A stretch of DNA of 64,000 nt from positions 186,001 through 250,000 of the IMG/VR virus record IMGVR_UViG_3300022868_000009, one strand, 5' to 3'. Shown here one piece after another: positions 7,932 through 58,046 of this stretch (its first letter is position 1; each line of letters opens with the position of its first letter). The translations under genes were made by a program, and so were the position numbers. The notes under the pieces are model-generated. The model ran no database searches. It worked only from the letters and a program-made list of their open reading frames with translations, and was not told the origin of the DNA.

Positions 7932-8072
7932 AGAATTTTTGAAAAAATTTGTATTATTTTCAACTTTTAAATATATTTATAATATATAATAGAATGTTTT
8001 TTAACAAAAAAGAATTATAAAAAATATCATTAATTTTGTTATTGGCATTGTAACTAAAAAACAAAAAGTTTT

Positions 8073-8669
8073 ATGGGAAAAAATAAACATGAAGTCAAAT
8101 TCAAAGAAGCAACTGGACAAGAATTTTCTAAATTTTATCAAGATCAAATGCCTAGATTAACTTGGCATCTTTCAAATTATACAAAAGATTTTGAAGTAGC
8201 AGAAGATTTTGCAAATGACGCATTTGAACAAGCCTTAAAAAAAATTGAAACTTATGATAAAAATAAGTCTCAAATTCAAACTTGGTTATACACAATTGCT
8301 AGACACATTGTTATTCAATCTTGGAATAAAAAGCAAAAAATGCCATCCGTCTCAATTGATAAAGAATATGACGTAAACCTTTCATTAAGTACTTTTTTAC
8401 CTTATGAAGATGGAAAAGAAGATTTAGAAAAGTATAATACTTATGTTGAAAAGGCTAAGATTATAAAAGAAGTTATTAAAAATCTTCCTCCTAAATACAA
8501 AGAAGTCATGGAATTAAGAGAATTAGATAATATGCAATATAAGGAAATTGCGAAGTATCTTAAGAGAAACGAATCTACTGTTAAATCTCAAATTCGAAAA
8601 GGACGTGAATTAATAAGAGATAAAGTGCAGAAAAAATTCGATTACATTGATAAACATGGACTGGAATAA
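8073..8669 (+). CDS. ECF-type RNA polymerase sigma factor
   Basis: Region 2 AEDFANDAF...TWLYTIARH; region 4 LPPKYKEVMELR...YKEIAKYL...STVKSQIRKGR. Confidence 0.9.
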   Translation: MGKNKHEVKFKEATGQEFSKFYQDQMPRLTWHLSNYTKDFEVAEDFANDAFEQALKKIETYDKNKSQIQTWLYTIARHIVIQSWNKKQKMPSVSIDKEYDVNLSLSTFLPYEDGKEDLEKYNTYVEKAKIIKEVIKNLPPKYKEVMELRELDNMQYKEIAKYLKRNESTVKSQIRKGRELIRDKVQKKFDYIDKHGLE

Positions 8670-8678
8670 CCCAATATT

Positions 8679-8706
8679 AAAGAGCCTTGTTTTTACAAGG
8701 CTCTTT
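8679..8706 (+). terminator. Intrinsic terminator
   Basis: AAAGAGCCTTGT-TTTT-ACAAGGCTCTTT perfect 12-bp stem after sigma gene. Confidence 0.85.
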
Positions 8707-8738
8707 CTACTTAAACTTATTAATAAAATTAACATATA

Positions 8739-8948
8739 ATGAGTAATATTTCGAAAGAAAATAAAAAATTAGCTAAAAACTGGTTTATAAAAAACATTGA
8801 TAAATATAATCTATCAACTTGGGATGATGAAGATGATTCATACAAATTATTTGAAGATCTACATAAAGATACAAGCATTAATTATGAAGATAAATTATAT
8901 TATAGAGAAGTTTTTACATTAGCCATGAAAATAAAAGATGAAATATAG
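8739..8948 (+). CDS. Hypothetical protein
   Basis: ORF in overlapping gene run. Confidence 0.55.
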   Translation: MSNISKENKKLAKNWFIKNIDKYNLSTWDDEDDSYKLFEDLHKDTSINYEDKLYYREVFTLAMKIKDEI

Positions 8949-9273
8949 AGTTTTTAAAGAAAGTATAGGATGGAGTGAAGGTTTATTTATATTTCCATTT
9001 GAAATTAAATTTAGTGAAATTAGTAATTTTCCACAAACACATTTTATATGTAAAGATAATTATTTAGGAGAATTTACATTTGATTTAAAATTTTTAAAAA
9101 TTTTAAATCAAGGTAAAATTAATGATAAAACTTTTTGGTTTGAATATTTGTTCGAACATGATTCAGATGATTCAATTAAAAACAAAAAAGAACCTTTAAT
9201 GAGAGAAGAACCTAAAATTGTCCCTAAAATAGTTCCTAAAAAGCAATTACCTGAAAATGAAAGTCTATTTTAA
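8938..9273 (+). CDS. Hypothetical protein
   Basis: ORF, TAATG coupling to next gene. Confidence 0.6.
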   Translation: MKYRVFKESIGWSEGLFIFPFEIKFSEISNFPQTHFICKDNYLGEFTFDLKFLKILNQGKINDKTFWFEYLFEHDSDDSIKNKKEPLMREEPKIVPKIVPKKQLPENESLF

Positions 9274-9614
9274 TGTGTAAAGTTGTTCATTTTAAAAAAG
9301 ACAATTATGATATTTATATTGGTCGTTTACCTAATGATGAATATAATAAATGGTCTTATCCAAAATGTTTATCTGAACAAATGTCAGGTGTTACAAGAAT
9401 AGAGAAAATAAATGCTTATGAATATTATTTAATTAATAATGAAGAATTGATGAATAATTTACATGAACTTAAATATAAAACTTTAGGATGTTGGTGTAAA
9501 GACAAAGGAGGCGGAGGTAAAAAATGTCATGGAGACATAATTAAAAAATACGTAGATAAATTAGAACTTAAAGATAAACAAAAAAATCTTAATTATAATG
9601 ATTGGGATTTTTAA
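9273..9614 (+). CDS. DUF4326-family protein
   Basis: YDIYIGR ... LGCWC ... CHGD motifs. Confidence 0.8.
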   Translation: MCKVVHFKKDNYDIYIGRLPNDEYNKWSYPKCLSEQMSGVTRIEKINAYEYYLINNEELMNNLHELKYKTLGCWCKDKGGGGKKCHGDIIKKYVDKLELKDKQKNLNYNDWDF

Positions 9615-9692
9615 AGAAAAATGATTTGGAATTGATTTTTTTTAACAAAAAAATTTAGTATTTTAGTAATAGGTAAAAAAAAAGAATGATAT

Positions 9693-10085
9693 GTGATGAA
9701 CAAAGATAAAATAATACCTACTCACAATGGTTTAGAAAGAATAAGAACATATACAATAGAAGAAGTTTTTAAATGGATTGACGATAATCCAAGAAAAACA
9801 TACTGGGAAGACGGAGAATATAGGATTAAAATGACACGAGCAAAAATTTTTAAAAAGAAAGGATTAATTTGCTCTATATGTGGGCTCGAAGGACTCTATT
9901 TTATATTAGAAAAAGATAAAGGCGGTGGTATACACTTAGATTTATATGGTTTAGAAAATGAAGTTGAAATATTACTCACAGTTGACCACATAATTCCTAA
10001 ATCTAAAGGTGGTATAAATAATATAATAAATTATCAAACCATGTGTAAATATTGTAATGAATTAAAATCAGATGATAACTTTTAA
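9693..10085 (+). CDS. HNH endonuclease
   Basis: CSIC ... TVDHIIPKSKGG...NYQTMCKYCNELK. Confidence 0.85.
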   Translation: MMNKDKIIPTHNGLERIRTYTIEEVFKWIDDNPRKTYWEDGEYRIKMTRAKIFKKKGLICSICGLEGLYFILEKDKGGGIHLDLYGLENEVEILLTVDHIIPKSKGGINNIINYQTMCKYCNELKSDDNF

Positions 10086-10098
10086 AAATTAAAAAATA

Positions 10099-10350: not shown

Positions 10351-10353
10351 AAT

Positions 10354-14750: not shown

Positions 14751-14805
14751 TTTAAACTTGACTATCTAATTAAAATATATAAAGTTGTAGTAGAAAATTT
14801 TGGTC

Positions 14806-14888: not shown

Positions 14889-15863
14889 ATGACACATTAC
14901 AGAATGTCGGACAGAGATCCGAGTGCCGTTATTATGGCAAAAAATCCACGCACTGGTTCCCTAGAGGAACTAAAAATCTACATAGGAAATATAGTATATC
15001 TACAAGATAGACAAGAATTCCAACTTAGATTATTTAATCCAACCCACGAAAAACTTGGTGTACAAATCAATTTAAATGGGAAAATTAATGATCAAGTCCT
15101 AATATTAAACCCAGGACAAGATTACACAATTGATCGTTTTCTTAACGAACAAAAAAAGATGTTATTTGAAACCTATTCAATAGATGGTGGAAATGCATCA
15201 GCTAAAAAAGCAATTGAACTTAACGGTTTAGTTGAAATCAATTTCTTCAAAGAACAAAATCATTCATACACAACTACTACAACTGGTGTGAATAATATTC
15301 AATTCGGATCTAACTTTACTATCACAAATTCAAATTCTAGATGTTATGATTCAGGTACTATAAATTTAGGCGATATGAATCAAATGCGGACGACTACAAA
15401 AGAAACTGATAACTCAATCTTTTTTTCATCAGATTTAGGTGATGTTCAAACAGGTGATTTAACTATAGACGGTGGTGATTTAACTACAGATAGTTTAACT
15501 ACAGATAGTTTAACAATTGAAGGTGATTTAACTGTAACAGGTGACTTAAATCTTACATCTTCACAAAAACTTTCTTCAAAAGGAAAAGGTAAAGGTAAAC
15601 GTAAAAGAATATCTAAATCTATTAAATCTGAAAAAGTTGAAACAGGTAGAGTAGAAAAAGGTAAAATATCAAACCAAAACTTTCAACATGTTGAAGTTGA
15701 ATTTGATACTAATTCACCTATATTAACTCTAAATTATCAACTTAAACCAATAAGTTCTAAGACTTATGAAGTCAAAGAAATTAGAAACTATTGTTTAGAT
15801 TGTGGTTACAGAATAAGAAAACAATCATGGATGTATTGCCCAAAATGTGGTGAAGAATTATAA
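14889..15863 (+). CDS. Beta-sandwich protein with GDLT repeats and C-terminal zinc ribbon
   Basis: CLDCG...YCPKCG; internal repeats 15437-15551. Confidence 0.7.
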   Translation: MTHYRMSDRDPSAVIMAKNPRTGSLEELKIYIGNIVYLQDRQEFQLRLFNPTHEKLGVQINLNGKINDQVLILNPGQDYTIDRFLNEQKKMLFETYSIDGGNASAKKAIELNGLVEINFFKEQNHSYTTTTTGVNNIQFGSNFTITNSNSRCYDSGTINLGDMNQMRTTTKETDNSIFFSSDLGDVQTGDLTIDGGDLTTDSLTTDSLTIEGDLTVTGDLNLTSSQKLSSKGKGKGKRKRISKSIKSEKVETGRVEKGKISNQNFQHVEVEFDTNSPILTLNYQLKPISSKTYEVKEIRNYCLDCGYRIRKQSWMYCPKCGEEL

Positions 15864-21608: not shown

Positions 21609-21681
21609 TATAAATTTTTAAACATTTTTTATAATTGAGACAATATGAAAGTGATATATAATAAAAAATAAATGAAATGAA

Positions 21682-23376: not shown

Positions 23377-23628
23377 ATGGCAAAAGTAATTGAAATGACA
23401 GGCAGCCCTAAATCAGCGGGTTTTAAAACAAAATCTACTTTTTTAGAAAAATTAGCAGAATTTGGATTTACACAATCTAAAATGAAAAAGAAAGATAACC
23501 CAGTAGATATATTAGTAACAAATGATCCTGGATCTACAACATCTAAAATGACACTTGCCAATGAATTAGGTGTTGAAATTATGACTTATGAAGATCTTAA
23601 AGATTCATTCAATTTAGAGGTAGATTAA
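23377..23628 (+). CDS. Stand-alone BRCT domain protein
   Basis: MTGSP...ILVTND....SKMTLANELGVEIMTY. Confidence 0.75.
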   Translation: MAKVIEMTGSPKSAGFKTKSTFLEKLAEFGFTQSKMKKKDNPVDILVTNDPGSTTSKMTLANELGVEIMTYEDLKDSFNLEVD

Positions 23629-23671
23629 AAACTTTTTAACTGTAAGACACTATAATATAAACCAAAAAATT

Positions 23672-24121
23672 TTAATTGTATTTCGTTCTTCGATTTACTT
23701 TTTGAGTTATTTCAAAAAGTAAATCAAGAATATAATTGTCACATTCTTCATTTTTCGTTTCTTCTATTGGAACTGGATTTTCGAAATTTGGATTTTTTTC
23801 CGCTCTTTTTTGATCATCTCTAAACCATTGATCTTCATTAATATAATATTCAAATCTCAAACCATTATCTAAAATAATAATTATCATATCATTTTTACTT
23901 TCACTAGAATCAGATGAATTACTAAGTCTAACATCTTTAATTTTACCACCAGGTAAAGTTTGTAAAACTTTCCCAATATATTCACTAAAATCTAGATCAG
24001 ATCTATTATTTCTTTGAAATTCTGATTTCCAGTCATCAAATTCATGTCTATCATCTTGATTTAAAGAACCATAAATATCTTTAAGTTTATTAAAATTCTC
24101 GAATTTTTTTAAGTATTTCAT
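23672..24121 (-). CDS. Putative internal virion protein (MKYLKKFENF tag)
   Basis: Tag plus late motif. Confidence 0.65.
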   Translation of the reverse strand: MKYLKKFENFNKLKDIYGSLNQDDRHEFDDWKSEFQRNNRSDLDFSEYIGKVLQTLPGGKIKDVRLSNSSDSSESKNDMIIIILDNGLRFEYYINEDQWFRDDQKRAEKNPNFENPVPIEETKNEECDNYILDLLFEITQKVNRRTKYN

Positions 24122-24468
24122 AATCGTTTTTTTTTTTTGTGGTTATTGATATTATATATATTATTAAGTTGAAATATTTTTAGAGAAATTTTTTACAAAT
24201 GGTATATAAATTTCTCTATAAGGTGACTCATTTTTAATTTGAGGGTGTTTATTAACTAGTTTTTTTAACCTATTTAATTGTTCATCTATATCATCTATTT
24301 TAGTAATATCATCTAACATTTCTTCTAAATCTTTTATTTCTAATTTATAAAGACCAAGTTGATCGCTTACTGATTTCCAATCTTTATCATTATTGAATGT
24401 ATCATTCCATTCGTTGAATTTTCTTAAGTATTTCATAATCTTTTTTTTGGGTTATTGATATTATATAT
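24101..24468 (-). repeat. Duplicated ~55-bp promoter/leader/tag cassette (24101-24159 and 24416-24468)
   Basis: TATATAATATCAATAACC..A-run..GATTATGAAATACTTA(A/G)AAAATTC on minus strand in both copies. Confidence 0.85.
24164..24436 (-). CDS. Putative internal virion protein (MKYLRKFNE tag)
   Basis: Tag plus late motif. Confidence 0.65.
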   Translation of the reverse strand: MKYLRKFNEWNDTFNNDKDWKSVSDQLGLYKLEIKDLEEMLDDITKIDDIDEQLNRLKKLVNKHPQIKNESPYREIYIPFVKNFSKNIST

Positions 24469-24503
24469 CAACAAAAAAAAATGGTTTTTAACAAGATTGA
24501 AGA

Positions 24504-24908
24504 TTAAAATAATTCTTTTTCTAATTCTTTCATACATTGAATAACACCAAATTTGGTACCTTCCAATATAAAATCATATAAAGAAAATATATTATTACTC
24601 TTTGGTGAATCATCAAACCAATTATTATCATTACAAATATCATCAACATCACTTTGATATTTCAAATAAAAATTAAAAATATCTCCATTCTCAACAAAAT
24701 CTTGTAATTTACCTGGTTCTGGGTCATTAATGTAATCTCTGATAAAATTTTGAACATTAACCAATTCAGTTGTATTATCAACTGAATTATCTAATAAATC
24801 TAATACTCCTCTCTTTAAAGAAATATATTGTTCGGTTAGTTTATCTTTAAGAGTATCTTCAAGATTCTCTTTTATCATTTTTGAATATTCTTCTGTAAAT
24901 TTTTTCAT
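24504..24908 (-). CDS. Putative virion protein (MKKFTE tag)
   Basis: TAATATATAG immediately upstream. Confidence 0.6.
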   Translation of the reverse strand: MKKFTEEYSKMIKENLEDTLKDKLTEQYISLKRGVLDLLDNSVDNTTELVNVQNFIRDYINDPEPGKLQDFVENGDIFNFYLKYQSDVDDICNDNNWFDDSPKSNNIFSLYDFILEGTKFGVIQCMKELEKELF

Positions 24909-24931
24909 AAGACTATATATTATTATATTTT

Positions 24932-25876
24932 TTAAAAATCTGATGCATTTAATAATGTGTATTGATAAATACCACCTTCCAATTTAGTTCGATATTTTTC
25001 ACATAAAGACATAAATCTTTGAAAATCAGACCAATAATGTATTACTTGACAACCTGCAGACCATGATTTAACACCACTCCCTGGTGATGATTTTTCGGTA
25101 CCTACCTTAGTAGAATGTATATTAATACCTCCACCTTCACTACTATTAATATTATAATGAAAAGTTCCGTTTTTTGTAGGATCTCTATGAACTGGTAAAT
25201 TATAAGTAGGGTTCAACGCTCTATATCTAGCAGAATTAGTTTGTTTATGATATCCAAGTTTATATGTAAATTGTCCCTCTTTTAAAATTGAACAACCTTT
25301 AGAATTTAATAATTTTTTAAGGTAATAAACTCCAGGTTTTGTAGTACATTCAAATTCTTCAACAATATCATCATATACAACTAGCATAGTATCATTCCAA
25401 TTATTCGGTTTATCAGCGTTTCTAACTCCTATTAATTGAAAAGGTTCAATCCATTTGTATTTTTTTAGTTTAAAAATTCGTTTAAGTTGACTAACCGTAA
25501 TATTTGAAGGTTTTGGTGTTGTGTTTGCTGGATTAGAACTACCATTATTTGAAGTTGATATATTTGTTTGACCACCTTGACCTATTGATGAATCTAATTG
25601 TTTAGTAGGTGTATAAGTTCCCCATTCAGGGTTATTATATATAACATCTGATTCTCCAAAAGTATCTCCATCTACATACGGATCATAACTATCATCATCG
25701 GCATTAATATTACTAGAATATTGATTCATTTCAGAATAAGTAAACTCATTTGCGTCACCATATGAACCAGAATCTTCAAAATCATCAACACCACTATAAG
25801 GATCATATTCTTCTTTTATCACAGTCTCCTGTTTTTGTGTTATTGGCTTTGTTTCATCATATTTAGGTATAGCCAT
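24932..25876 (-). CDS. Baseplate-linked putative peptidoglycan enzyme (YkuD/L,D-transpeptidase-like C-terminal domain)
   Basis: CTTKPG ... GINIH ... WSAGCQVI His/Cys signature; low-complexity N-half; coupled to gp5-like gene. Confidence 0.65.
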   Translation of the reverse strand: MAIPKYDETKPITQKQETVIKEEYDPYSGVDDFEDSGSYGDANEFTYSEMNQYSSNINADDDSYDPYVDGDTFGESDVIYNNPEWGTYTPTKQLDSSIGQGGQTNISTSNNGSSNPANTTPKPSNITVSQLKRIFKLKKYKWIEPFQLIGVRNADKPNNWNDTMLVVYDDIVEEFECTTKPGVYYLKKLLNSKGCSILKEGQFTYKLGYHKQTNSARYRALNPTYNLPVHRDPTKNGTFHYNINSSEGGGINIHSTKVGTEKSSPGSGVKSWSAGCQVIHYWSDFQRFMSLCEKYRTKLEGGIYQYTLLNASDF

Positions 25877-27039
25877 TATTTATATCTTATAAATTTTTTA
25901 GTTTTCTTATCAAAAATTGCAATTTTTCCATCTTCTGTTTCTCTATATATAATATCCTTTTTAGTACCAGAAGTTGGTATCGTTTTTATTATTTTAGGTT
26001 CTAAACCACTTGATTTTTTAACATTTAATTTCTTAAAATCTTTATATTGTGCGTATTCAGATTCATCTGTTTCAATTGTCTCACCATCAACAACTTTAAT
26101 ATATGTTATATATTCAGTTCCGTCTTCGTTTTGACTAACAAAAGGAGCGTCATCTATAATAAATTTTGATGGTTGTGATTCTACTTCTTTATCTACAGCC
26201 TTTTCTCTTTCTTCATTAACTTTTTCTTTAAAATCTTTTGAAACATATTCAGATTTTAAAAGTTTTTTAGGTTTTGGTTCATTAAATTTATCAGTTAAAT
26301 CAATTGTAAGATCATCATCATCTTTAATAACAGACGTTTCAGGTGATCTTTTCAATTTCTTAATTTTATTATCATCATTCAAGAAAACATTATCAGAAAC
26401 AAAAGTTTCTCTGATTACTTTATATTCCATTAACAACATATCTAACTCTGGTCTAATAATAGGGGCCGCTAAATTTCCTGTTAATGTTGTAGGAACCAAT
26501 AATTTATTGATAAATTTATCCATCCACGCAAAAAAATTAGTTCCTAAAACAGCTTCTTGATCTGCAGTTTTATCACCTAAATTTATTTTCTGTGAATTAT
26601 CTTTTAATTCAATATTAATAGAATTATTATCTATTCTAATTTTATTATATTTATGATCTATTATAAATTCATCACCATTTGTATATACCTGAGAAGTTTC
26701 ATCAAATAATAAAGCCACAAAATTCAAATAATCATCTTCACTTAAACTCTTTAATTTTCTTTCAAGATTTATATTGTAATTCTCACTATAAATATAATGA
26801 GGATCATATATATCATCATTTAGAAAAATAACATTCACTATTTTACCAATAGCAGGAACCTCAAAAGATTTTCCAGCTAACCCCCTATATGGGGAAGAAT
26901 ATGGCAAATCTTCCATTGGTATAGTATCAAAAACACCTTGTACCCTAACTTTAAGTCTACCTTTTCTATTAGGATCTTTATTATCTTCTACAATACCTAC
27001 AAATATTTTATCTCTAATATCAACATTAATTTGTTGCAT
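25876..27039 (-). CDS. Baseplate hub/spike protein with gp5 OB-fold
   Basis: GIVEDNKDPNRKGRLKVRV...VPAIGKIVNVIF. Confidence 0.8.
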   Translation of the reverse strand: MQQINVDIRDKIFVGIVEDNKDPNRKGRLKVRVQGVFDTIPMEDLPYSSPYRGLAGKSFEVPAIGKIVNVIFLNDDIYDPHYIYSENYNINLERKLKSLSEDDYLNFVALLFDETSQVYTNGDEFIIDHKYNKIRIDNNSINIELKDNSQKINLGDKTADQEAVLGTNFFAWMDKFINKLLVPTTLTGNLAAPIIRPELDMLLMEYKVIRETFVSDNVFLNDDNKIKKLKRSPETSVIKDDDDLTIDLTDKFNEPKPKKLLKSEYVSKDFKEKVNEEREKAVDKEVESQPSKFIIDDAPFVSQNEDGTEYITYIKVVDGETIETDESEYAQYKDFKKLNVKKSSGLEPKIIKTIPTSGTKKDIIYRETEDGKIAIFDKKTKKFIRYK

Positions 27040-27054
27040 ATAATTCTTTTAATT

Positions 27055-28695: not shown

Positions 28696-28703
28696 ATCTT
28701 ATT

Positions 28704-30071: not shown

Positions 30072-30072
30072 A

Positions 30073-30519
30073 TTATTCTAATTTGTTTGTTATTCTAATT
30101 CTACCCGCTTTCTTATCATTTGTAACCTGACTTAATCCTTTAGGTTTCATAGTTGGAGATAACTTAGGAGTACCGTCTGGTTTCTTTTCTTGAAATTTTG
30201 TCAATTTATCAAAAGCAGAATCATCATCTTTTCCACCATGTAATATCATAAGATTTTCAGGAGAAAAATATAAGATTTCATCACCTTCTTTAATATTCCA
30301 TGGATTATAAATATTATTAACAACCATTAATTCTTCAATAAAATCCGTGTGAGTATATAAATAATCACATATTAAATCGAGTCTCATTTCATGTTCAGGC
30401 AATACAACATAAACATAAAAATTCTGTTCTATATCATAAATAACAGTTGTTCCGAAAATATCATATAAACCATTACTTGTTCTTTTAAAACCATCTAAAT
30501 CATCTAAAGAATATAACAT
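30073..30519 (-). CDS. Baseplate wedge LysM-like protein (gp53-like)
   Basis: RLDLICDYLY...VNNIYNPWNIKEGDEI. Confidence 0.7.
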   Translation of the reverse strand: MLYSLDDLDGFKRTSNGLYDIFGTTVIYDIEQNFYVYVVLPEHEMRLDLICDYLYTHTDFIEELMVVNNIYNPWNIKEGDEILYFSPENLMILHGGKDDDSAFDKLTKFQEKKPDGTPKLSPTMKPKGLSQVTNDKKAGRIRITNKLE

Positions 30520-30548
30520 ATTAAAATTTAATTTTTAAACATCACCAT

Positions 30549-32186: not shown

Positions 32187-32246
32187 TATTTGATATAAAT
32201 TTTAATTATATATTAAAATAATTAAACTGAAACAAAAAGAAAAAAA

Positions 32247-32660: not shown

Positions 32661-32840
32661 TTAAACATCAATCATTTTTAGTTATATATAAGACACCCCA
32701 GGTCCAAAATTAACCAAAGTTCATGACAAAAAATGTCATTAATTAAAATTAAAAATTTCACCAACTTTTTCACAACTTCAAAATACAAACTTGACAATCT
32801 GTGAAATATAATCTTTCACACAAAAATTAATTCATTATGA

Positions 32841-34085
32841 ATGGCTAAAAGTACAGGAAAATTTGACTTTTCCAAATTAACAAGCGTAGTTGAAGATATT
32901 TCAAAAAAGACCGCTATTATGATTGAAAAAGATAATAAACAAACATCTTTTATTGATACTGGTATTTATACTTTCAATGCACTACTTTCTAAAAATATTC
33001 GAACTGGCGGTATTTCAAAGAATAGAATTACCGTATTAGCTGGACCCCCACAATGTGGTAAATCTTATTTATGTTATAATATTGCTAGAAATGCTCAAAA
33101 AGAAGGATATAATATTATTTATATTGATACTGAATTTTCAATTGAAAAACATGAAATGGAAAAATTCGGTATAAATATTAGCGAAGATAGATTAATGTTA
33201 ATAAGATCAAATAAAGTAGAAGATCTTAAAATAATGTTAACGCAACTTCTAGATAATCTTAAAACACAAAAACAAGATGGTGTTGATATAGGAAAAACAA
33301 TCATATTCCTAGATTCAATTGGTCAATTAGCATCCAATAAAGAAGTAGAAGATGCTTTAGGCGGTAAAATTAAAGTTGATATGTCTAGAGCAAAAGCTAT
33401 CAAATCTCTCCTTAGAATTATTAATAGTGATCTTGGATATTTAGATATTCCATTAGTAGCTACTAACCATGTTTATATGACACAAGATTTATATCCAGTT
33501 GCTGTAATGGGCGGTGGTGAAGGAATCACATATACTGCATCTACTGTAGTTTATATGAGTATAGCTAAACTTAAAACAGGTGAAGAAAATAAAGATTATA
33601 AAATGTATGTGTCTGATATTGGGCAATCTGGTGTTATAGTAACTGCAAAATCTAGAAAGAATAGATTAGCAAAACCAATGAAAATTAAATTCGAAATTAA
33701 TCATAACGAAGGAACAAATCCTTATAGAGGACTTGAAGTATTTTGTACTCCAGAAAACTTTGATAAAGTTGGTATTGCAAAAGTTAAAAAAGTAGAATCA
33801 GGTCGAGGTAAAGCTAAGACAATAGAATATCAAGCTGGTGGTACTAAATATTACGTTAAACATTTAGATCAAAGTTTTTATGAAAAATCATTATTTAATG
33901 GTAAAATTTTCACTGATGAAGTAATTACTGCTCTTGAACCAATCGTTCAAACATACTTTGAATATTCATCATATGATGAACAACAGAAAATCATGGATAA
34001 TTTGGACTCTGAACACGCAAAATTTGAATCAGATACTGATTTTGATATTGATGGTGATAATGATGGGCAACTTTTTGATAAATAA
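32841..34085 (+). CDS. uvsX: RecA-like recombinase UvsX
   Basis: GPPQCGKS, YIDTE, FLDSIG, TNHVY, MGGG. Confidence 0.92.
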   Translation: MAKSTGKFDFSKLTSVVEDISKKTAIMIEKDNKQTSFIDTGIYTFNALLSKNIRTGGISKNRITVLAGPPQCGKSYLCYNIARNAQKEGYNIIYIDTEFSIEKHEMEKFGINISEDRLMLIRSNKVEDLKIMLTQLLDNLKTQKQDGVDIGKTIIFLDSIGQLASNKEVEDALGGKIKVDMSRAKAIKSLLRIINSDLGYLDIPLVATNHVYMTQDLYPVAVMGGGEGITYTASTVVYMSIAKLKTGEENKDYKMYVSDIGQSGVIVTAKSRKNRLAKPMKIKFEINHNEGTNPYRGLEVFCTPENFDKVGIAKVKKVESGRGKAKTIEYQAGGTKYYVKHLDQSFYEKSLFNGKIFTDEVITALEPIVQTYFEYSSYDEQQKIMDNLDSEHAKFESDTDFDIDGDNDGQLFDK

Positions 34086-47539: not shown

Positions 47540-47957
47540 TAATAATCTTAATTTAGTTTTATATATAAAATATTGATTAGTGATAAAAAAATTTTTCAAA
47601 AATTTCCTTGAATTCTCTAAGATGTTGATTTTATTGTATTTGAATTTTCAACAAATCCTTTAAATATAATAGTTTTAGAAATTTTAAAAAAGTGAAAAAT
47701 TTTTTAAATATATAAATAGTGTAGTATTTAAACAGAATTTAGATTGAAAAGTATTAAAAAAATTAAAAACTTTTATTTGAATTCGTTTTATATGATTTAA
47801 GATAAATTTTAAAACGCTTTAAAGTTTTTCAGTTGAACTAAACAACATTAAAAATTAGTATTATGAAGATTCAAATAATTCAAAGGCAATTAATAGCAAT
47901 CAAAGGATTTTTTAAGAATTACAAGAATTTTCATACAAAAAAAGGCAATTATAGGCA

Positions 47958-48914
47958 ATGAAAGAATTAGAAAACGTTGATCTTTTCAACATGACAGCTG
48001 ACGACGAATCGTTAAATGTCTTCGACAAACCGACTACAAATCAAGACGGAATTTACAGACCAAAATTAGATGAGGCAAAAGATAAGAAAACTGGATATCG
48101 TTCAGTTATTAGATTTTTACCTAACCTCTTCGAAAATGGTAAAATAGGACCTAGTGCAATAGAAAAACATGTACATTACGCTGACCTAAAAAACGAACCG
48201 GGATTAGCTAATTATTACGACTGTGCAAAAAACTGGGATCCTAAATGTCCACTCTGTACAATATATTGGAAACTTAAAAATTCCAAAAATCAAGCAGATG
48301 TTGAGAAATCTCAACTCATCAATAGAACAACTAAGTATTATTCTTATGTTCAAATTATTGAAGATGACCAAAACACCGATTTAATAGGAAAAATTTTAGT
48401 ATTCCCTTATGGATATACTATTAAAGAAAAAATTAACAGTGAACGTAATGGTGATGTTACTGGGGAACCCTGTAATGTGTTTGACTTAGCAACAGGCAAA
48501 GATTTTGTTCTTATTATCAAAGAAAAAGGTGGATTTCCAAATTATGAAGGATCACAATTTAAAGATAGTTCACCTATCAAATTGTATGATGCTAATAAAG
48601 CTAAATTCCTATCAGCTCCTGTAGATGAGAATGGTAGAATAACAAATGCTAAAGTGCAAAAGAAAGTCAAAGATTTCTTACTTGAAAGAACTGTAACACT
48701 TGATGAACATGCACCAGTACAATGGAATGAAGAAGTAAAAGGTAAAATTGAAAACATTTTAGCTATACTTAATGGTGAAGAAATAGTTAAAGCAGAAAGA
48801 TCTTCTAATAAGGCAACAACTGATTCAACAAATGATAACAAAGATCTACCAACTGACTTTGGTGGTGATGAAACAGACGCTGAAGATTTCTTTAGTATAG
48901 AAGATGAAGATTAA
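47958..48914 (+). CDS. Single-stranded DNA-binding protein (T4 gp32-like)
   Basis: IRFLP, CPLC, YY..V.II.D....GKI, FD...GKDF, acidic tail. Confidence 0.88.
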   Translation: MKELENVDLFNMTADDESLNVFDKPTTNQDGIYRPKLDEAKDKKTGYRSVIRFLPNLFENGKIGPSAIEKHVHYADLKNEPGLANYYDCAKNWDPKCPLCTIYWKLKNSKNQADVEKSQLINRTTKYYSYVQIIEDDQNTDLIGKILVFPYGYTIKEKINSERNGDVTGEPCNVFDLATGKDFVLIIKEKGGFPNYEGSQFKDSSPIKLYDANKAKFLSAPVDENGRITNAKVQKKVKDFLLERTVTLDEHAPVQWNEEVKGKIENILAILNGEEIVKAERSSNKATTDSTNDNKDLPTDFGGDETDAEDFFSIEDED

Positions 48915-54924: not shown

Positions 54925-55671
54925 TTAATCTTTTAAATCATATCTTTGTAAAATTCCTGCAATTATAGGATTTCTAACAATATCTTCAGGTCTATCTACT
55001 ATAAATTCATAAACTCCAACACCTTTAGCACCTTTCATTAAAGTGAATGCGTCATATAAACCACTACTATTCTTTTTATTATACCTATCAGTTTGTTCTA
55101 AATCACCACTAATAATAAATTTACTATTAAAACCAATTCTAGTTAAAACAGTTTTCATTTGTTTTGGTGTACAATTCTGTGCTTCTTCAAATATTAAAAT
55201 ACTATTATCTATATTCCAACCTCTTAAATAAGCTAAAGCTAAAGGTTTAATTATTTCAGATTCAACTAATTTTTTTCTATTTTCAATGCCTATTATTTTG
55301 TCAATAAGTTTATAAGTTGAATATAAATAAGGTTCTAATTTATCTTCTAAATCACCAGGTAAATAACCTAATTTCTCTTCTGATTCAACAGCTGGTGTAA
55401 TAATATAAATATTATGATAATTGTTAGAAGAATCAGCTAATAATTGTAATGCCTTAATTATACTAATATAACTTTTTCCTACACCGGCAGGTCCTATACA
55501 AATTGATATTTGATTACTATCAATTATTTTTATAAAATCTTTTTGTTTTTCATTTTTACATCTAATCTTAACTTTTTTGCCATATAATATATCTGCAAGT
55601 TGTTTATTATTTAACAACTCTTTATCTTTACTTTTTACATTTAATTTTGTTGTTATTATTGGTTTTCTCAT
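54925..55671 (-). CDS. phoH: PhoH-family ATPase
   Basis: GPAGVGKS, LGYLPG, RG, EEAQN, LTRIG, GDLEQ. Confidence 0.93.
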   Translation of the reverse strand: MRKPIITTKLNVKSKDKELLNNKQLADILYGKKVKIRCKNEKQKDFIKIIDSNQISICIGPAGVGKSYISIIKALQLLADSSNNYHNIYIITPAVESEEKLGYLPGDLEDKLEPYLYSTYKLIDKIIGIENRKKLVESEIIKPLALAYLRGWNIDNSILIFEEAQNCTPKQMKTVLTRIGFNSKFIISGDLEQTDRYNKKNSSGLYDAFTLMKGAKGVGVYEFIVDRPEDIVRNPIIAGILQRYDLKD

Positions 55672-55874
55672 ATAAATATTTTATTTTTAACCAAAAACAA
55701 AAAAACCACTCGTTGCAATATCGCATTTTAAGTGGCTTAAAAAAATATGTTTTTAGTATTCTTAATTTTCATTCATTATTATATATTTTTAAAAATAGAT
55801 GAAATTTTCACAATATTTTTAAAATAGTTTAAACAAAAAGTTTAATATATAAATAATATAATAACAAAAAATAT

Positions 55875-56108
55875 ATGAAATATTTAAAGACATACGAAGA
55901 ATTAACCGATTCACAAAAAGAATCTGAATATAATAAAAAATTAGAAGAACTAGAAGATAAAAAAGAAAGACTTCAGAAAAAACTCCAATATTCAGAAGAT
56001 GTAAGAGATCCAGAAAAAACAGAACAAATAAGAAAAGAAAAGAAAGAAGAAATTGAAAAGAATAAAAAGAAAAAGAGTTCTGAAGATCAAAACTCTTTTG
56101 TATCCTAA
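55875..56108 (+). CDS. Putative internal virion protein (MKYLKTYEE tag)
   Basis: TTAATATATA upstream; charged coiled coil. Confidence 0.65.
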   Translation: MKYLKTYEELTDSQKESEYNKKLEELEDKKERLQKKLQYSEDVRDPEKTEQIRKEKKEEIEKNKKKKSSEDQNSFVS

Positions 56109-56749
56109 TTTTTACATAATAAATCTGCAGCACTAGTAGAAGCATATGCTTTAGGTTTACATTCAACCTTAAATCCATAACCACACAACATACCCATCAT
56201 AGCTTTATAAACTTTATTAGATTTATTTCTACCATTTCCATCATCTGAATTAAAATCAACATGTAATACAGGTAATCTATAAGGCATAGAACCATCATAT
56301 TCATTTAATTCATGATCTTTAAAATATTTACCTTTTAATTTTTCATCTAAATATAAAGCAAGTTCAAGTAAATATAAACCTTCTGTATATAATCTATTAA
56401 AAATTGCTTCATTAGAACCTGAACTAATTAATTTTGAATTATCTGGTTTATTTTCTTTATACCATTGATCAAATTTATAACCTCTAGCAGCTAAATATTT
56501 AGGTATATTAATTCTTTTAAAAATACAATGCGCACCATTATGCTTAAAATTATCATAAAATACGATAGTTATAGCATATTGTGTTTTTCGTCTCTTATTT
56601 TTAGAATCACAACCAACAGAAATTGTAACATCACTTGGTACTGAATAATTACCAGATTTATCCCCTAAATATTCCATTATGTAATCAATTTCATTATCAA
56701 CGAAATCACCACCAAACCTTTTAAAGTAAATTTTATTTTTCATTTTCAT
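56105..56749 (-). CDS. RNase H-like YkuK (DUF458) family protein
   Basis: VGCDS, RLYTE, HVDFN, KPKAYASTSAAD. Confidence 0.82.
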   Translation of the reverse strand: MKMKNKIYFKRFGGDFVDNEIDYIMEYLGDKSGNYSVPSDVTISVGCDSKNKRRKTQYAITIVFYDNFKHNGAHCIFKRINIPKYLAARGYKFDQWYKENKPDNSKLISSGSNEAIFNRLYTEGLYLLELALYLDEKLKGKYFKDHELNEYDGSMPYRLPVLHVDFNSDDGNGRNKSNKVYKAMMGMLCGYGFKVECKPKAYASTSAADLLCKN

Positions 56750-56780
56750 TATTTTACAATTTTTAAAAAATTATATATTA

Positions 56781-56808
56781 AAAAATCCCACTGAGAGTGG
56801 GATTTTTT
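56781..56808 (-). terminator. Intrinsic terminator after S1 gene
   Basis: AAAAATCCCACT-GAG-AGTGGGATTTTT. Confidence 0.85.
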
Positions 56809-56810
56809 AT

Positions 56811-57962
56811 TTAATTAGGAAAGTCTAAATAAATCTTTCTATCGTCCCGTATAACAGAAATCACTTTAACTTTCACCTCTTTTCCCACTTCCAACTTTTT
56901 ATCAGCCTTCTGTATATAAGTGTTCTGAATTAACCCTGTTGTCTCTGGATCCAATTCTACTAAAACACCAAATGACTTGATAGATTTAACCTTGCCATCT
57001 TTAATTTGTCCAACTTTAATCTTATCCCACAAAGATTCTCTCAAAAATTGAGATAAAATAATCTTATTACCTTTCAAAATATCTCTAACATAGAATGTTA
57101 CTTCCATACCAGGTTGAACTTGATCAATCTTCCATTCAGGATTAAGATTGACTTTATGTATCATACCAGTTAAACATTCATTAAACTGAACAAATACACC
57201 GTAAGCCATTGTGCCTGTTACTGTTCCTTTATAAGCAATTGTTTTCTTAAGTTTACTAATTTCTACTGGAATTAGAGTTTTAAGATATTTCTTGCGTGAA
57301 ACAACATATACACCTTTCTCTTGTTGTAAAGATTCTAATAACACATTAATTCTACTACCAACTAAATTACTAGATTGTTCATCTGTTAATTTATTAATTC
57401 CAGCCAAAATATTTGGCATAAAAGATTTAATAGTTATATTATCCAACTCAATATCCAACATGAAACCTGCTGGTATTCTTTCAATAACTTTTACAACTAA
57501 CTGACGATTTTCTTTATAATAATCTTTCAATTTGTGCGAAACCTTCGCTTTAATAAGATCTGTTATTGAACCTTTAATTTGAAACGGATTATCTATCACC
57601 TTTATTATCATAACATCAATTTCATCACCAACCTTCAAATTTTGAATAATTTTAAAATCAGATAACTTATTCTCAACATAAATACTATCTTTATAATTTA
57701 TATTAATCTTAAGTTCCCTTTTAGAAATCGTTTCAATTTGACCAGTAACAATGTCACCTATTTTCACCTCATTATATGAAGATTCATTTTCAGACATCAT
57801 ATCTAACATCTCTTTATACTTATCATTAAAAGCTGATGTATCCATATCATCAGTCCACTTGATAATTTTATTATCTTCTTTCTCTAATTCATTCCAAAAC
57901 GCATCATCATCAATAATCGATGTATAATCTAAATTTTCTGGATTTTCTGAATTTTCTTTCAT
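56811..57962 (-). CDS. rpsA: Ribosomal protein bS1 homolog (about 4 S1 domains)
   Basis: GDIVTGQI; VVSRKKYL; GTVTGTMAYGVFV...GMIH; GKVKSIKSFGVLVEL...GLI. Confidence 0.82.
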   Translation of the reverse strand: MKENSENPENLDYTSIIDDDAFWNELEKEDNKIIKWTDDMDTSAFNDKYKEMLDMMSENESSYNEVKIGDIVTGQIETISKRELKININYKDSIYVENKLSDFKIIQNLKVGDEIDVMIIKVIDNPFQIKGSITDLIKAKVSHKLKDYYKENRQLVVKVIERIPAGFMLDIELDNITIKSFMPNILAGINKLTDEQSSNLVGSRINVLLESLQQEKGVYVVSRKKYLKTLIPVEISKLKKTIAYKGTVTGTMAYGVFVQFNECLTGMIHKVNLNPEWKIDQVQPGMEVTFYVRDILKGNKIILSQFLRESLWDKIKVGQIKDGKVKSIKSFGVLVELDPETTGLIQNTYIQKADKKLEVGKEVKVKVISVIRDDRKIYLDFPN

Positions 57963-58017
57963 AAATTAATTTTTTTGGTTAAACTTCTTTTATCTTTACA
58001 TATACTTAAACAATAAA

Positions 58018-58046
58018 AAAAAGTTGTTAAAAAAATTAACAACTTT
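58018..58046. terminator. Perfect inverted repeat overlapping the S1 promoter
   Basis: AAAAGTTGTTAA-AAAAA-TTAACAACTTTT. Confidence 0.6.

What the first reader, a model, noticed from the sequence alone, without database searches (positions are those of the whole stretch)
7961..58026. A distinct AACTT-N16-TATA promoter class matching the phage ECF sigma
Seen: exact 16-nt spacing at 7961 (CAACTT..TATATA, upstream of the sigma gene), 8713 (AAACTT..TATAAT), 14754 (..TATATA), 23629 (..TATAAT), 47767 (..TATATG, gp32 leader) and 58026 minus (..TATATG, S1). Weaker versions occur near 21620, 32762 and 52116. Known: ECF sigma -35 elements typically contain AAC(TT), and ECF genes are often autoregulated. 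Inference: middle-phase regulon of ORF 8073..8669 with positive feedback.
Basis: partly seen in the sequence, partly recalled or inferred. Interest (0 to 1): 0.6.

Follow-up and report, generated by a model that had tools for sequence, protein, structure and literature searches.

The report
Huge-phage ECF sigma and its promoters
A 345-kb fragment of an uncultured T4-like "huge" phage carries a real, evolutionarily conserved promoter class (aAAACTTTT-N13-TAnA) in front of its own ECF-type sigma-factor gene, its DNA-replication genes and its tRNA clusters; this class most likely forms the sigma's self-activating "middle" regulon, a role that T4 fills with MotA/AsiA.

Summary
All six sites exist as described. 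Genome-wide (344.6-kb IMG/VR virus contig), AACTT-N16-TATA has 17 intergenic copies against a mean of 3.25 at other spacings (Poisson 7e-8). A PWM gives 23 intergenic sites among 28 hits although intergenic DNA is 11% of the genome; nearly all point at a nearby gene start or a tRNA cluster.

ORF 8073-8669 is an ECF-type sigma (TIGR02937 above cut-off; nearest structures SigW and E. coli sigmaE). The motif copies the sigmaE promoter plan (GGAACTTTT, 16-nt spacer) but lacks the upstream G's and has an A/T -10.

AAC-N18-TAnA lies upstream of the sigma gene in 53 of 69 non-redundant orthologues (38-78% identity) and upstream of gp32 in all 10 relatives tested.

The genome has two other promoter-like classes: an early-block class with a TAnnTTTG box, and a -10-only ATATATAA class before the capsid gene. 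It also has a second, gp55-like sigma that fits the latter class.

Downstream genes are T4-style middle functions: gp32, UvsX, PolB, topoisomerase II, PhoH, tRNAs, the sigma itself and probably gp55.

No transcript data exist, so the sigma-promoter link and the timing remain inferred. It is a new member of the known phage sigma-cascade kind.

The parts
7962..7988 (+). Class B promoter-like site upstream of the sigma gene (tcAACTTTT-N13-TATATA). The -10 end lies 85 nt before the ATG. The -10 region also forms a class C word (TAATATATAA).
   Evidence: score 16.0. The same architecture is conserved upstream of orthologues.
8073..8669 (+). ECF-type (group IV) sigma factor, 198 aa, with sigma2 and sigma4 domains only.
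   Evidence: Pfam Sigma70_r2 5e-12 and Sigma70_r4_2 1.5e-14. phrog_1740 9e-25. TIGR02937 80.6 bits against a cut-off of 42.9. PDB SigW 2e-14 and sigmaE 3e-9. It is the only sigma-70-family gene that Pfam finds in the contig.
8679..8706 (+). Terminator-like hairpin (12-bp stem, followed by UUUCUACUU) between the sigma stop codon and the next promoter.
   Evidence: -17.7 kcal/mol, z = -6.7, 0 of 200 shuffles fold as well. It was not called by the strict terminator scan.
8714..8740 (+). Class B site (ttAAACTTAT-N-TATAAT). Its -10 overlaps the ATG of ORF 8739-8948, so it probably serves the genes further downstream (8938 onward).
   Evidence: score 15.7. ORF 8739-8948 is not conserved after the sigma gene in relatives.
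14755..14781 (+). Class B site (ttAAACTTGA-N-TATATA), 108 nt before ORF 14889-15863 (324 aa, zinc-ribbon-like C-terminus, function unknown). It also overlaps a class C word.
   Evidence: score 13.1.
23630..23656 (+). Strong orphan class B site (aaAAACTTTTT-N13-TATAAT), directly after the stop of ORF 23377-23628. It points antisense into the convergent minus-strand block 23672-32660.
   Evidence: (score 16.9). There is no Rfam match in the window.
32763..32789 (+). Weaker class B site (cCAACTTTTT-N13-TACAAA), 52 nt before the UvsX/RecA-like gene.
   Evidence: score 12.8.
32841..34085 (+). UvsX/RecA-like recombinase, a putative regulon member.
   Evidence: Pfam RecA 6.5e-12.
47768..47794 (+). 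Class B site (aaAAACTTTTA-N13-TATATG), 164 nt before gp32.
   Evidence: score 16.8. An equivalent site is present upstream of gp32 in all 10 sigma-bearing relatives tested.
47958..48914 (+). gp32-type single-stranded-DNA-binding protein, a regulon member.
   Evidence: Pfam gp32 2.3e-15 and phrog_224 8e-27.
57999..58025 (-). Class B site (acAACTTTTT-N13-TATATG), 37 nt before the S1-domain protein gene.
   Evidence: score 16.7.
56811..57962 (-). S1 RNA-binding-domain protein (383 aa), a regulon member.
   Evidence: Pfam S1 1.6e-18.
55816..55842 (-). Class B site (ttAAACTTTTT-N13-TAAAAA), 145 nt before PhoH.
   Evidence: score 14.3.
54925..55671 (-). PhoH-like ATPase, a putative regulon member.
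   Evidence: Pfam PhoH 1.7e-57.
2996..3022 (-). Class B site (atAAACTTTTC-N13-TAAATT), 24 nt before ORF 1782-2972 (396 aa, no family match).
   Evidence: (score 14.5).
5498..5524 (+). Weaker variant (caAAACTATTT-N13-TATATA), 37 nt before ORF 5561-5785. It overlaps a class C site at 5518.
   Evidence: (score 12.2).

Best explanation
The window is part of an uncultured T4-like huge phage. It has a gp23 capsid, gp20 portal, gp32, UvsX, PolB and a gp55-like sigma. Its nearest GenBank records are the 634-735-kb 'Mahaphage' genomes, which are predicted to infect Bacteroidetes.

It is most likely read by host core RNA polymerase carrying the phage's own ECF-type sigma (ORF 8073-8669). In this model sigma4 reads the AAC + T-tract -35 element, and sigma2 reads a short A/T -10 core at a fixed spacer of 16 (+/-1) nt.

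Proposed programme:
1. Host sigma transcribes a block of about 60 small early genes from a different promoter class (...TCCGTATaTTTGTAT).
2. Some sigma is made, possibly by read-through from the gene upstream, since no terminator separates them.
3. The sigma then activates its own monocistronic gene (promoter 7962, terminator hairpin 8679-8706). This is positive feedback.
4. It also activates about 25 units that encode DNA replication, recombination and nucleotide functions (gp32, UvsX, PolB pieces, topoisomerase II, an AAA ATPase, IMPDH/GMP reductase), PhoH, HSP20, an S1 protein, three tRNA clusters and probably the gp55-like late sigma.
5. The gp55-like sigma then reads the abundant -10-only class ttAATATATAA in front of the capsid gene and other late-type genes.

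Shown here: the motif's reality, geometry, orientation and conservation; the sigma's family; the gene content behind each class.
Inferred: that this sigma reads this motif; the temporal order; the priming step.
For: Motif statistics:
- Spacing-specific intergenic enrichment: 17 against a mean of 3.25, P = 7e-8.
- 23 of 28 PWM hits are intergenic.
- 25 of 27 sites are oriented toward a gene start or a tRNA cluster.

Sigma family:
- TIGR02937 80.6 bits against a cut-off of 42.9; nearest structures SigW and sigmaE.

Promoter plan:
- It equals the group IV plan. E. coli sigmaE has -35 GGAACTTTT and -10 TCAAA with a 16-nt spacer strongly preferred (PMC1312014).
- Group IV -35 elements consist of a G region, an AAC motif and a T-tract (PMC1540707).
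- The phage sigma aligns without gaps to sigmaE region 4. That fits the retained AAC and the lost upstream G's.
- The last -10 position is not a conserved T (A8 C1 G6 T8), unlike group-1 -10 elements. ECF -10 recognition uses a short core (PMC6648896).

Conservation:
- AAC-N18-TA[TCA]A[AT]N lies upstream of the sigma gene in 53 of 69 non-redundant orthologues at 38-78% identity. Unrelated spacings give about 6-17 and the antisense control 1-11.
- AAACTT(T)-N15-17-TATAAn lies upstream of gp32 in 10 of 10 relatives.
- With the self-promoter excluded, AACTT-N16-TATA is still enriched in the relatives' intergenic DNA: 22 and 25 sites against about 3-14.

Assignment by elimination:
- Three classes occupy separate territories.
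- Class A carries TAnnTTTG and is confined to the early-like block.
- Class C has no -35 and precedes gp23 and other large genes.
- A gp55-like minimal sigma exists: E 2e-33 to a relative's ORF that hits phrog_234, and hhalign against T4 gp55 gives E 1e-4.
- No MotA or AsiA was found.

Gene content:
- The downstream genes are T4-type middle functions.
- A class-B-like site is conserved upstream of the gp55-like gene in three genomes.
Against: - There are no transcript data. No RNA run holds the phage, so no TSS, no timing and no dependence on the sigma have been shown.
- Conservation of the promoter upstream of the sigma gene is equally expected if another factor reads it.
- The -10 (TAnA, A/T only) is unlike the characterised ECF -10 cores (GTC or CGT).
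- S172 together with A at -34 breaks the S->G, T->A rule of PMC1540707. Position 175 is R, not F or H.
- Variation in the -35 tail among orthologues (TT, AA, AT, TA) does not co-vary cleanly with region 4.2 residues.
- No anti-sigma partner was found.
- The contig is only about 48% complete by CheckV, so other transcription factors may be encoded off-contig.
- One regulon member is structural: portal gp20, with a TATAAC -10.
- Two sites are orphans.
- The 735-kb relative shows no convincing self-promoter.
- The gp55-like assignment rests on transitive and moderate evidence. The phage's own ORF has no direct PHROG hit.
Confidence: 0.65

Rival explanations
1. Cascade without autoregulation. The AAC-N18-TAnA class is real, but it is read by something else: a host sigma (for example a host ECF sigma), or host sigma plus an undetected phage activator in the MotA/AsiA style. 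The phage ECF sigma gene is then just one member of that class, and the sigma itself reads a different promoter set, for example class C or promoters not recognised here.
For: - Conservation of the motif before sigma orthologues fits this model as well.
- The contig is about 48% complete, so factors may be missing.
- The A/T -10 and several region 4.2 residues deviate from the characterised ECF rules.
- There is no clean sigma-motif co-variation.
Against: - The motif's AAC + T-tract + 16-nt spacer is the group IV signature and nearly identical to the sigmaE -35.
- A two-domain sigma with an invariant sigma4 recognition helix needs a -35 element, and class C has none.
- Profiles for MotA and AsiA find nothing.
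- The last -10 base is unconserved, which argues against a group-1 sigma.
- The predicted Bacteroidetes hosts use -33/-7 promoters (own knowledge), which class A resembles and class B does not.
Confidence: 0.2
2. Class B sites are ordinary host-sigma early promoters of an AT-rich host, with no phage factor involved.
For: - The -10 often reads TATAAT.
- The phage must have some host-dependent promoters.
Against: - The -35 is AAACTT, not TTGACA, and sigma-70-type consensus matches are not enriched (30 against 28.3 in shuffles).
- The -7 T is not conserved.
- Class B is absent from the dense early-like block, which has its own far stronger class.
- The genes served are replication-phase functions.
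Confidence: 0.08
3. The motif is a composition artefact of 25% GC DNA, or it is a non-promoter element such as a protein-binding site for replication or packaging, or part of a terminator.
For: - AT-rich intergenic DNA produces many TATA words.
- The AACTT word itself is not enriched in intergenic DNA (2.27 against 2.19 per kb).
Against: - The enrichment is specific to one spacing.
- The sites have a strong orientation bias toward gene starts.
- The element is conserved in otherwise unalignable flanks upstream of two different orthologous genes across 38-78% protein identity.
- It sits just downstream of terminator hairpins in several cases.
Confidence: 0.04

Closest known systems
E. coli sigmaE (RpoE, ECF02-type) promoters and ECF autoregulation
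   Same: - The sigma has two domains (sigma2 + sigma4).
- The -35 has the AAC motif followed by a T-tract (GGAACTTTT against aAAACTTTT).
- A 16-nt spacer is preferred.
- The sigma gene is preceded by its own promoter type.
(PMC1312014, PMC1540707.)
   Different: - There is no upstream GG.
- The -10 is TA(t)A(a/t) rather than (G)TCAAA.
- Positions 175 and 176 are R and K instead of F and R.
- No anti-sigma partner was detected.
- The sigma is encoded by a virus and appears to drive replication genes and tRNAs, not an envelope-stress regulon.
- Protein similarity to sigmaE is only family-level (E 3e-9).
Bacteriophage T4 middle transcription (MotA/AsiA sigma appropriation)
   Same: - The phage architecture is the same (gp23, gp20, gp32, UvsX, gp55-like).
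- The same kinds of genes sit behind the motif: gp32, uvsX, DNA polymerase, topoisomerase, tRNAs and gene 55.
- A box near -30 is combined with an A/T -10.
- The class lies between an early class and a -10-only late class.
(The T4 facts are from my own knowledge and from PMC12276001's discussion.)
   Different: - No MotA or AsiA homologue was found.
- The box is AAACTTTT, not TGCTTtA.
- The -7 T of the host -10 is not conserved.
- The proposed mechanism is sigma replacement by a phage ECF sigma, not remodelling of the host sigma.
[quoted passage not shown]
   Same: A phage-encoded two-domain sigma redirects host core RNAP from early to middle (and late) phage promoters (PMC12276001; PMC13401047 abstract).
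   Different: [quoted passage not shown] Its promoters are defined by AATGTA at -11.5, and it needs the co-factor gp79.
- The sigma here is a canonical ECF by profile score, with a bipartite sigmaE-like promoter.
- Apparent autoregulation is conserved.
- A separate gp55-like sigma is available for late genes.
Sigma factors noted in 'group 2' jumbo phages and huge phages
   Same: T4-capsid-type jumbo phages are reported to encode a minimal gp55-like sigma and a 'more complete' sigma, and to lack their own RNAP (PMC7824862; PMC13282480). The Mahaphage-clade genomes are the closest GenBank hits.
   Different: Those papers list the genes. In the passages I read they give no cognate promoter motif, regulon or autoregulatory site. 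The motif, its conservation and the three-class map are derived here.

Membership tests
ECF (group IV) sigma-70-family sigma factor (the protein at 8073-8669) | Only the sigma2 and sigma4 domains are present, with no region 1.1 or region 3, and the length is about 170-220 aa. | tested here: met
   The protein is 198 aa. Pfam Sigma70_r2 covers residues 22-89 and Sigma70_r4_2 covers 130-179, with nothing else matched.
ECF (group IV) sigma-70-family sigma factor (the protein at 8073-8669) | The score is above the curated cut-off of the ECF superfamily model. | tested here: met
   TIGR02937 sigma70-ECF scores 80.6 bits against a cut-off of 42.9. No equivalog or subfamily model reaches its own cut-off.
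ECF (group IV) sigma-70-family sigma factor (the protein at 8073-8669) | A co-transcribed cognate anti-sigma factor (common in the family, but not universal). | tested here: not met
   The sigma gene is followed by a terminator hairpin. The next small ORF is not homologous to the ORFs that follow the sigma in relatives (18-22% identity).
ECF (group IV) sigma-70-family sigma factor (the protein at 8073-8669) | The protein binds core RNAP and directs initiation. | not testable with these tools
   This needs biochemistry or a reporter assay.
Group IV (ECF-type) promoter | A -35 element with the AAC motif followed by a T-rich tract. | tested here: met
   AAC is present in 23 of 23 PWM sites and is followed by TTTT. 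AAC is invariant in the orthologues' self-promoters. The definition comes from PMC1540707.
Group IV (ECF-type) promoter | An upstream G region (G at -35/-34) read by R176 and S172. | tested here: not met
   Those positions are A or T. The sigma has K176, and it has S172 with A at -34.
Group IV (ECF-type) promoter | A narrow spacer distribution around 16 nt between the -35 and -10 elements. | tested here: met
   N16 is sharply preferred. N15 and N17 variants occur in relatives.
Group IV (ECF-type) promoter | A short -10 core of the GTC/CGT type. | tested here: not met
   The -10 is TA(t)A(a/t) with a free last position. The length fits an ECF -10, but the sequence does not.
Group IV (ECF-type) promoter | Transcription starts about 5-6 nt downstream of the -10 and depends on the sigma. 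| not testable with these tools
   No RNA runs hold the phage.
T4 MotA-dependent middle promoter | A MotA box (a/t)(a/t)(a/t)TGCTTtA about 12 bp upstream of a sigma-70 -10 TAnnnT, together with the motA and asiA genes. | tested here: not met
   The box is AAACTTTT and the -7 T is not conserved. PF09114 (MotA) and PF09010 (AsiA) find nothing in the contig, which may be incomplete.
Group 1 sigma-70 promoter (TTGACA-N17-TATAAT) | A TTGACA-like -35 and a -10 with conserved A-11 and T-7. | tested here: not met
   The -35 differs. The T-7 position reads A8 C1 G6 T8. Sigma-70-type matches are not enriched around the sigma gene.
T4 gp55-type late sigma (the gene at G000:C1:14229-14606, proposed reader of class C) | Homology to gp55 (phrog_234). 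| tested here: inconclusive
   The ORF is 50% identical (E 2e-33) to a relative's ORF that hits phrog_234 at 4e-7. hhalign against T4 gp55 gives E 1.2e-4 and probability 55% over 80 columns. The phage's own ORF has no direct PHROG hit.

The most novel reading that the evidence does not exclude
In a widespread clade of uncultured T4-like huge phages (Mahaphage-type, probably infecting Bacteroidota), the T4 MotA/AsiA middle mode has been replaced by a self-activating, canonical ECF sigma. Its sigmaE-like promoter (aAAACTTTT-N13-TAnA) is conserved across genomes of 190-675 kb. It appears to act as the master switch for replication genes, the phage's tRNA clusters and the gp55-type late sigma. It may also fire an antisense transcript into a late operon (site 23630). 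This would give a complete three-tier programme (classes A, B and C) that can be read from sequence alone in phages that cannot be cultured.
Probability: 0.5. Interest if true: 0.6.

Novelty: new member of a known kind. Interest (0 to 1): 0.5.

Why it matters
Huge phages are known almost only from metagenomes, and their gene-expression programmes are unknown. Published surveys record that T4-capsid-type jumbo phages carry sigma genes, but I found no cognate promoter described for them.

The work here provides:
- a concrete, conserved promoter motif;
- a candidate regulon of about 25 units;
- a three-class promoter map: early with a TAnnTTTG box, middle of the ECF type, and late with a -10 only.

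Uses:
- These allow temporal annotation of hundreds of unannotated genes across this clade.
- They give a directly testable sigma/promoter pair for in vitro transcription or for orthogonal-ECF reporter assays.
- They suggest that a T4-like lineage solved the 'middle gene' problem by sigma replacement rather than sigma appropriation. That may matter for infecting Bacteroidota, whose primary sigma and promoters are atypical.

It is not a new principle, because phage sigma cascades are classical.

Tried and rejected
- **RNA evidence.** The look-up of sequencing runs returned 24 DNA metagenome runs (salt lake and marine), all kept as contigs, and no RNA. I did not use read laying, because contigs cannot show starts.
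- **Direct searches for T4 proteins.** T4 gp55 and gp45 as single queries found nothing in the contig. The profiles phrog_234, phrog_12791 and phrog_223 also found nothing. gp55 was reached only through a relative's ORF.
- **MotA/AsiA.** The Pfam profiles found nothing.
- **Sigma-motif co-variation.** The -35 tail (TT, AA, AT, TA) follows the sigma phylogeny, but R/K at position 175 tracks it only partly. I make no claim from this.
- **Anti-sigma.** The ORF after the sigma is not conserved.
- **Megablast against cultured phages.** No match. Single-protein locus searches with the sigma and with gp32 found only a near-identical 348-kb contig.
- **Rfam on the window.** No match, so nothing explains the orphan site at 23630.
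- **Sigma-70 consensus scan.** Not enriched.
- **TAG or TGA recoding** (prompted by the two CTA-anticodon tRNAs). A count of stop-codon read-through showed no extension of TAG- or TGA-terminated genes. I translated no protein under another code.
- **Idea rejected: class B is a subset of class C.** Only 2 of 120 intergenic ATATATAA sites have AACTT at the right distance.
- **Sigma-minus control set not run.** Such phages would be so distant that absence of the motif would not discriminate between the hypotheses.
- **Not used.** The large representative protein search, structure prediction and complex prediction were not needed.

Full report
**What the window is.** The 64-kb window is bases 186,001-250,000 of a single 344,634-bp, 25% GC IMG/VR virus contig. 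The contig is classed as linear, and CheckV estimates it is about 48% complete. It encodes a T4-type set of proteins:
- gp23 major capsid protein and gp20 portal;
- gp32 SSB;
- a UvsX/RecA-like recombinase, PhoH and a fused type II topoisomerase;
- PolB pieces, one with an intein;
- the ribonucleotide reductase large subunit;
- 35 tRNAs in four clusters.

No cultured phage is similar at the DNA level. The closest GenBank hits to its sigma factor are the uncultured 634-735-kb genomes LR745206 and LR756501-04, at about 40% identity. Their sizes match the four largest 'Mahaphage' genomes, which are predicted to replicate in Bacteroidetes (PMC7162821). DNA runs that hold the phage are salt-lake and marine metagenomes.

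**Checking the observation.** All six sites are exact.
- The window has 10 matches to AACTT-N16-TATA, against 3.9 +/- 1.8 in shuffles.
- Genome-wide, only the 16-nt spacing stands out. Of 29 matches, 17 are intergenic. The mean for other spacings is 3.25 (Poisson P = 6.7e-8). The smaller N14 peak is the TATATA register shift.
- Iterating a PWM gives the fuller consensus aAAACTTTT-N13-TA(t)A(a/t)n. The last -10 position is unconserved (A8 C1 G6 T8).
- With a core PWM, 23 of 28 hits at score >=13 are intergenic, although intergenic DNA is 10.9% of the genome.
- Of 27 intergenic sites scoring >=12, 22 point at an ORF start within 200 nt, 3 lie upstream of three of the four tRNA clusters and 2 are orphans.

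**The sigma.** ORF 8073-8669 (198 aa) has Sigma70_r2 and Sigma70_r4_2 domains only. It scores 80.6 bits on TIGR02937, the ECF superfamily model, against a cut-off of 42.9. Its nearest solved structures are B. subtilis SigW (2e-14) and E. coli sigmaE (3e-9). It is the only sigma-70-family gene that the Pfam profiles find in the contig. The gene looks monocistronic: promoter-like site at 7962, the ORF, then a 12-bp hairpin at 8679-8706 (-17.7 kcal/mol, z = -6.7), then the next site at 8714.

**Three promoter-like classes, not one.** Unbiased dyad and k-mer searches of intergenic DNA revealed two further classes.
- **Class A** has the consensus ATTTTTattTTtnGAAnAaanTCCGTATaTTTgTAttAt. It occurs about 20 times, all on the + strand, at genome 306.8-341.2 kb (roughly 300-345 kb, just past the dense block). 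That region includes a block (300-330 kb) of about 60 small co-oriented genes that looks like a classical early region. It contains TAnnTTTG, which from my own knowledge is the Bacteroidota primary-sigma -7 box. Only 8% of genes have a Shine-Dalgarno-like motif. Both points agree with the predicted Bacteroidetes host of the nearest published genomes.
- **Class C**, ttAATATATAA, is the commonest signal. ATATATAA occurs 93 times in upstream regions against 9.7 expected, with 120 intergenic copies in all. The median position is 28 nt before the ATG, and there is no -35 element. It precedes gp23, at least five DUF7487 paralogues, several unannotated proteins of 869-1292 aa, a ClpB-like ATPase and a helicase. 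This resembles T4 late promoters (TATAAATA, -10 only; own knowledge).
It is dispersed, absent from the early block, and overlaps class C at only two sites (7962 and 14755).

**A second sigma resolves the assignment.** T4 gp55, gp45, MotA and AsiA were not found directly. However, two near-complete relatives (483 kb and 436 kb) that carry the ECF sigma also have a 121-aa ORF that matches phrog_234, the gp55 late sigma, at 4e-7. Using that ORF as the query finds a 50%-identical ORF in this genome at G000:C1:14229-14606 (E 2e-33). A profile of the three sequences aligns to the N-terminal 80 residues of T4 gp55 (E 1.2e-4, probability 55%). The phage therefore has two sigma-type factors:
- a minimal gp55-like one, which suits the -10-only class C;
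- a two-domain ECF one, which needs a -35 element, and only class B offers one of the ECF type.

The gp55-like gene is itself preceded by AAACTTTT...TATAAC in this genome and in both relatives, with spacings of 14-16 nt. That suggests a cascade from the ECF sigma to gp55.

**Match to the ECF promoter paradigm.** E. coli sigmaE promoters have -35 GGAACTTTT and -10 TCAAA, with a 16-nt spacer 'strongly preferred' (PMC1312014). Group IV -35 elements consist of an upstream G region, the AAC motif and a T-tract. R171 (or K) reads the C of AAC, S172 reads G-34, F175 reads A-33 and R176 reads G-35 (PMC1540707).

The phage motif keeps AAC, the T-tract and the spacer, but it has A/T where sigmaE has GG. 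The phage sigma aligns without gaps to sigmaE region 4 with identical numbering.
- It keeps R149, Y156, T169 and S172.
- It has K171, which is compatible with the retained C.
- It has K176 in place of the G-35 reader R176, which is compatible with the lost G.
- R175 and S172 (with A at -34) do not follow the published rules.

The -10 (TAnA) differs from the sigmaE core 'GTC'. ECF -10 recognition uses a short core set by a swappable specificity loop (PMC6648896). The unconserved last base argues against a group-1 sigma.

**Comparative evidence.**
- The word-based protein search found about 20 homologues.
- An alignment-based scan of viral contigs found 80 loci with orthologues at 38-52% identity, on contigs of up to 675 kb.
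- Every orthologue first inspected, down to 39% identity, had aAACTTTT-N13-TATAAT/G just upstream of the gene.
- Across 69 non-redundant upstream regions, 53 have AAC-N18-TA[TCA]A[AT]N (48 of them as AAAC). Unrelated spacings give about 6-17, and the antisense control gives 1-11.
- The two bases after AAC vary by clade (TT, AA, AT, TA, CT), while AAC, the spacing and TAnA stay fixed.
- With the self-promoter excluded, AACTT-N16-TATA is still enriched in the relatives' intergenic DNA: 22 and 25 sites against about 3-14 at most other spacings.
- Independently, gp32 orthologues in all 10 sigma-bearing relatives that hold one (44-49% identity, 9 distinct upstream regions) carry AAACTT(T)-N15-17-TATAAn 52-98 nt before the start codon.
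- The published 634-kb genome has AACTT-N15-TATAAT 105 nt upstream of its sigma orthologue. The 735-kb genome shows no convincing site.

**Regulon content.** Genes behind class B sites:
- **Replication, recombination and nucleotide metabolism:** gp32, UvsX-like, PolB (intein-bearing piece), the PolB exonuclease piece, topoisomerase II, an AAA ATPase and IMPDH/GMP reductase.
- **Transcription:** the sigma itself and the gp55-like gene (weak site).
- **Other functions:** PhoH, HSP20, NUDIX (weak site), a CNNM/CBS protein, an S1-domain protein and a glycosyltransferase.
- **RNA genes:** three tRNA clusters.
- **Structural:** the gp20 portal (-10 TATAAC).

Apart from the portal, these are the kinds of genes that T4 expresses from MotA-dependent middle promoters (own knowledge).

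**Interpretation and limits.** The best-supported model is a three-tier programme:
1. host sigma reads class A (early);
2. the phage ECF sigma reads class B (middle, self-activating);
3. the gp55-like sigma reads class C (late).

What is shown: the motif's reality, geometry, orientation, conservation and gene context, and the families of the two sigma proteins.

For priming I suggest read-through from ORF 7077-7931, because no terminator intervenes.

The main rival is that another factor reads class B and the sigma gene is merely a member of the class. It cannot be excluded without transcription assays, and I give it about 0.2. No RNA data exist.

**Precedent.** Phage sigma cascades are classical. 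Examples are SPO1, T4 gp55 and phiEco32 gp36, which uses AATGTA promoters and needs the co-factor gp79 (PMC12276001). Surveys already note sigma genes in T4-capsid-type jumbo phages (PMC7824862, PMC13282480). I found no description of this motif, its autoregulatory placement or the regulon. The finding is therefore a new member of a known kind, and it has practical value for annotating uncultured huge phages.

Noticed in passing
G000:C1:306816-341168 (+ strand; outside the window), plus 270373: A very strong promoter-like family, ATTTTTattTTtnGAAnAaanTCCGTATaTTTgTAttAt, has about 20 copies. They lie 15-70 nt (some further) before small + strand genes in a dense early-like block. The motif contains a TAnnTTTG box, as in the Bacteroidota primary-sigma -7 element. 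These are probably host-dependent early promoters.
   Followed up: partly
window 1705-, 5518+, 18493+, 21654+, 24159-, 24468-, 32213-, 32689-, 41270+, 41275-, 44732-, 47566-, 52594+, 55845+, 56778-, 59934-: These are class C sites (ttAATATATAA). The motif has no -35 element and mostly lies 27-32 nt before the ATG. Genome-wide there are 120 intergenic copies, which precede gp23, DUF7487 paralogues and very large unannotated proteins. They are probably late promoters of the T4 TATAAATA type.
   Followed up: partly
G000:C1:14229-14606 (+), outside the window: A gp55-like minimal sigma (125 aa) lies next to the capsid/portal module. An AAACTTTT...TATAAC element precedes it, and that element is conserved in two relatives.
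   Followed up: yes
window 23630-23656 (+): This is one of the best-scoring class B sites, but it has no + strand gene for 9 kb. It fires antisense into the 3' end of the convergent minus-strand block 23672-32660, which has class C sites and large unknown proteins. It may produce an antisense or non-coding transcript. Rfam gives no match.
   Followed up: partly
G000:C1:112614-112688 and 140629-140701: Two tRNAs have a CTA anticodon (ARAGORN labels them 'Pyl'; they would read TAG). TAG is the rarest stop (41 of 479 genes), but none of the TAG-terminated genes extends into a long open frame. Recoding is therefore not evident, and the role of these tRNAs is unexplained.
   Followed up: partly
window 8714-8948: The -10 of the 8714 site overlaps the ATG of ORF 8739-8948 (69 aa), and that ORF is not conserved after the sigma gene in relatives. 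It may not be a gene. In that case 8746-8937 would be a leader for the operon that starts at 8938.
   Followed up: partly
L126-L133 upstream of gp32; window 47795-47957: In several relatives the gp32 leader ends in a conserved AAAAAGCAATT just before the ATG. This phage has ...AAAAAGGCAATTATAGGCA and a long 164-nt leader. This is reminiscent of the T4 gene 32 translational operator. I did not analyse it.
   Followed up: no
G000:C1:1788-3440, 8010-9752, 95580-97226, 100168-101979, 130817-132418; also L004 and L007: There is a paralogous family of 530-600-aa DUF7487 proteins, with at least 5 copies in this genome and more in relatives. Each copy lies behind a class C site. The function is unknown.
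   Followed up: no
G000:C1:129767-130780 and 343815-344495: DNA polymerase B is in pieces. One fragment carries an intein splicing domain. A PolB exonuclease-domain ORF lies at the very end of the contig. Both have class B sites upstream.
   Followed up: no
L006:2432-3634 and L007:7622-8824: In two relatives an IS605 OrfB/TnpB (Cas12f-like) gene lies two genes upstream of the sigma orthologue.
   Followed up: no
window 9693-10085 (+): An HNH homing-endonuclease-like ORF lies in the operon downstream of the sigma gene (phrog_6050, 1e-16).
   Followed up: no
L054, L056, L063, L049 (contigs of 79 to 676 kb; L054 and L056 are 640-675 kb): The sigma orthologues in these relatives, including the two largest (640-675 kb), sit in much longer open frames (at least 400 aa by my crude ORF extension). 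Their self-promoters have variant -10 elements (TACAAG, TAAAAG). This may be an N-terminal extension or a fusion. I did not examine it.
   Followed up: no
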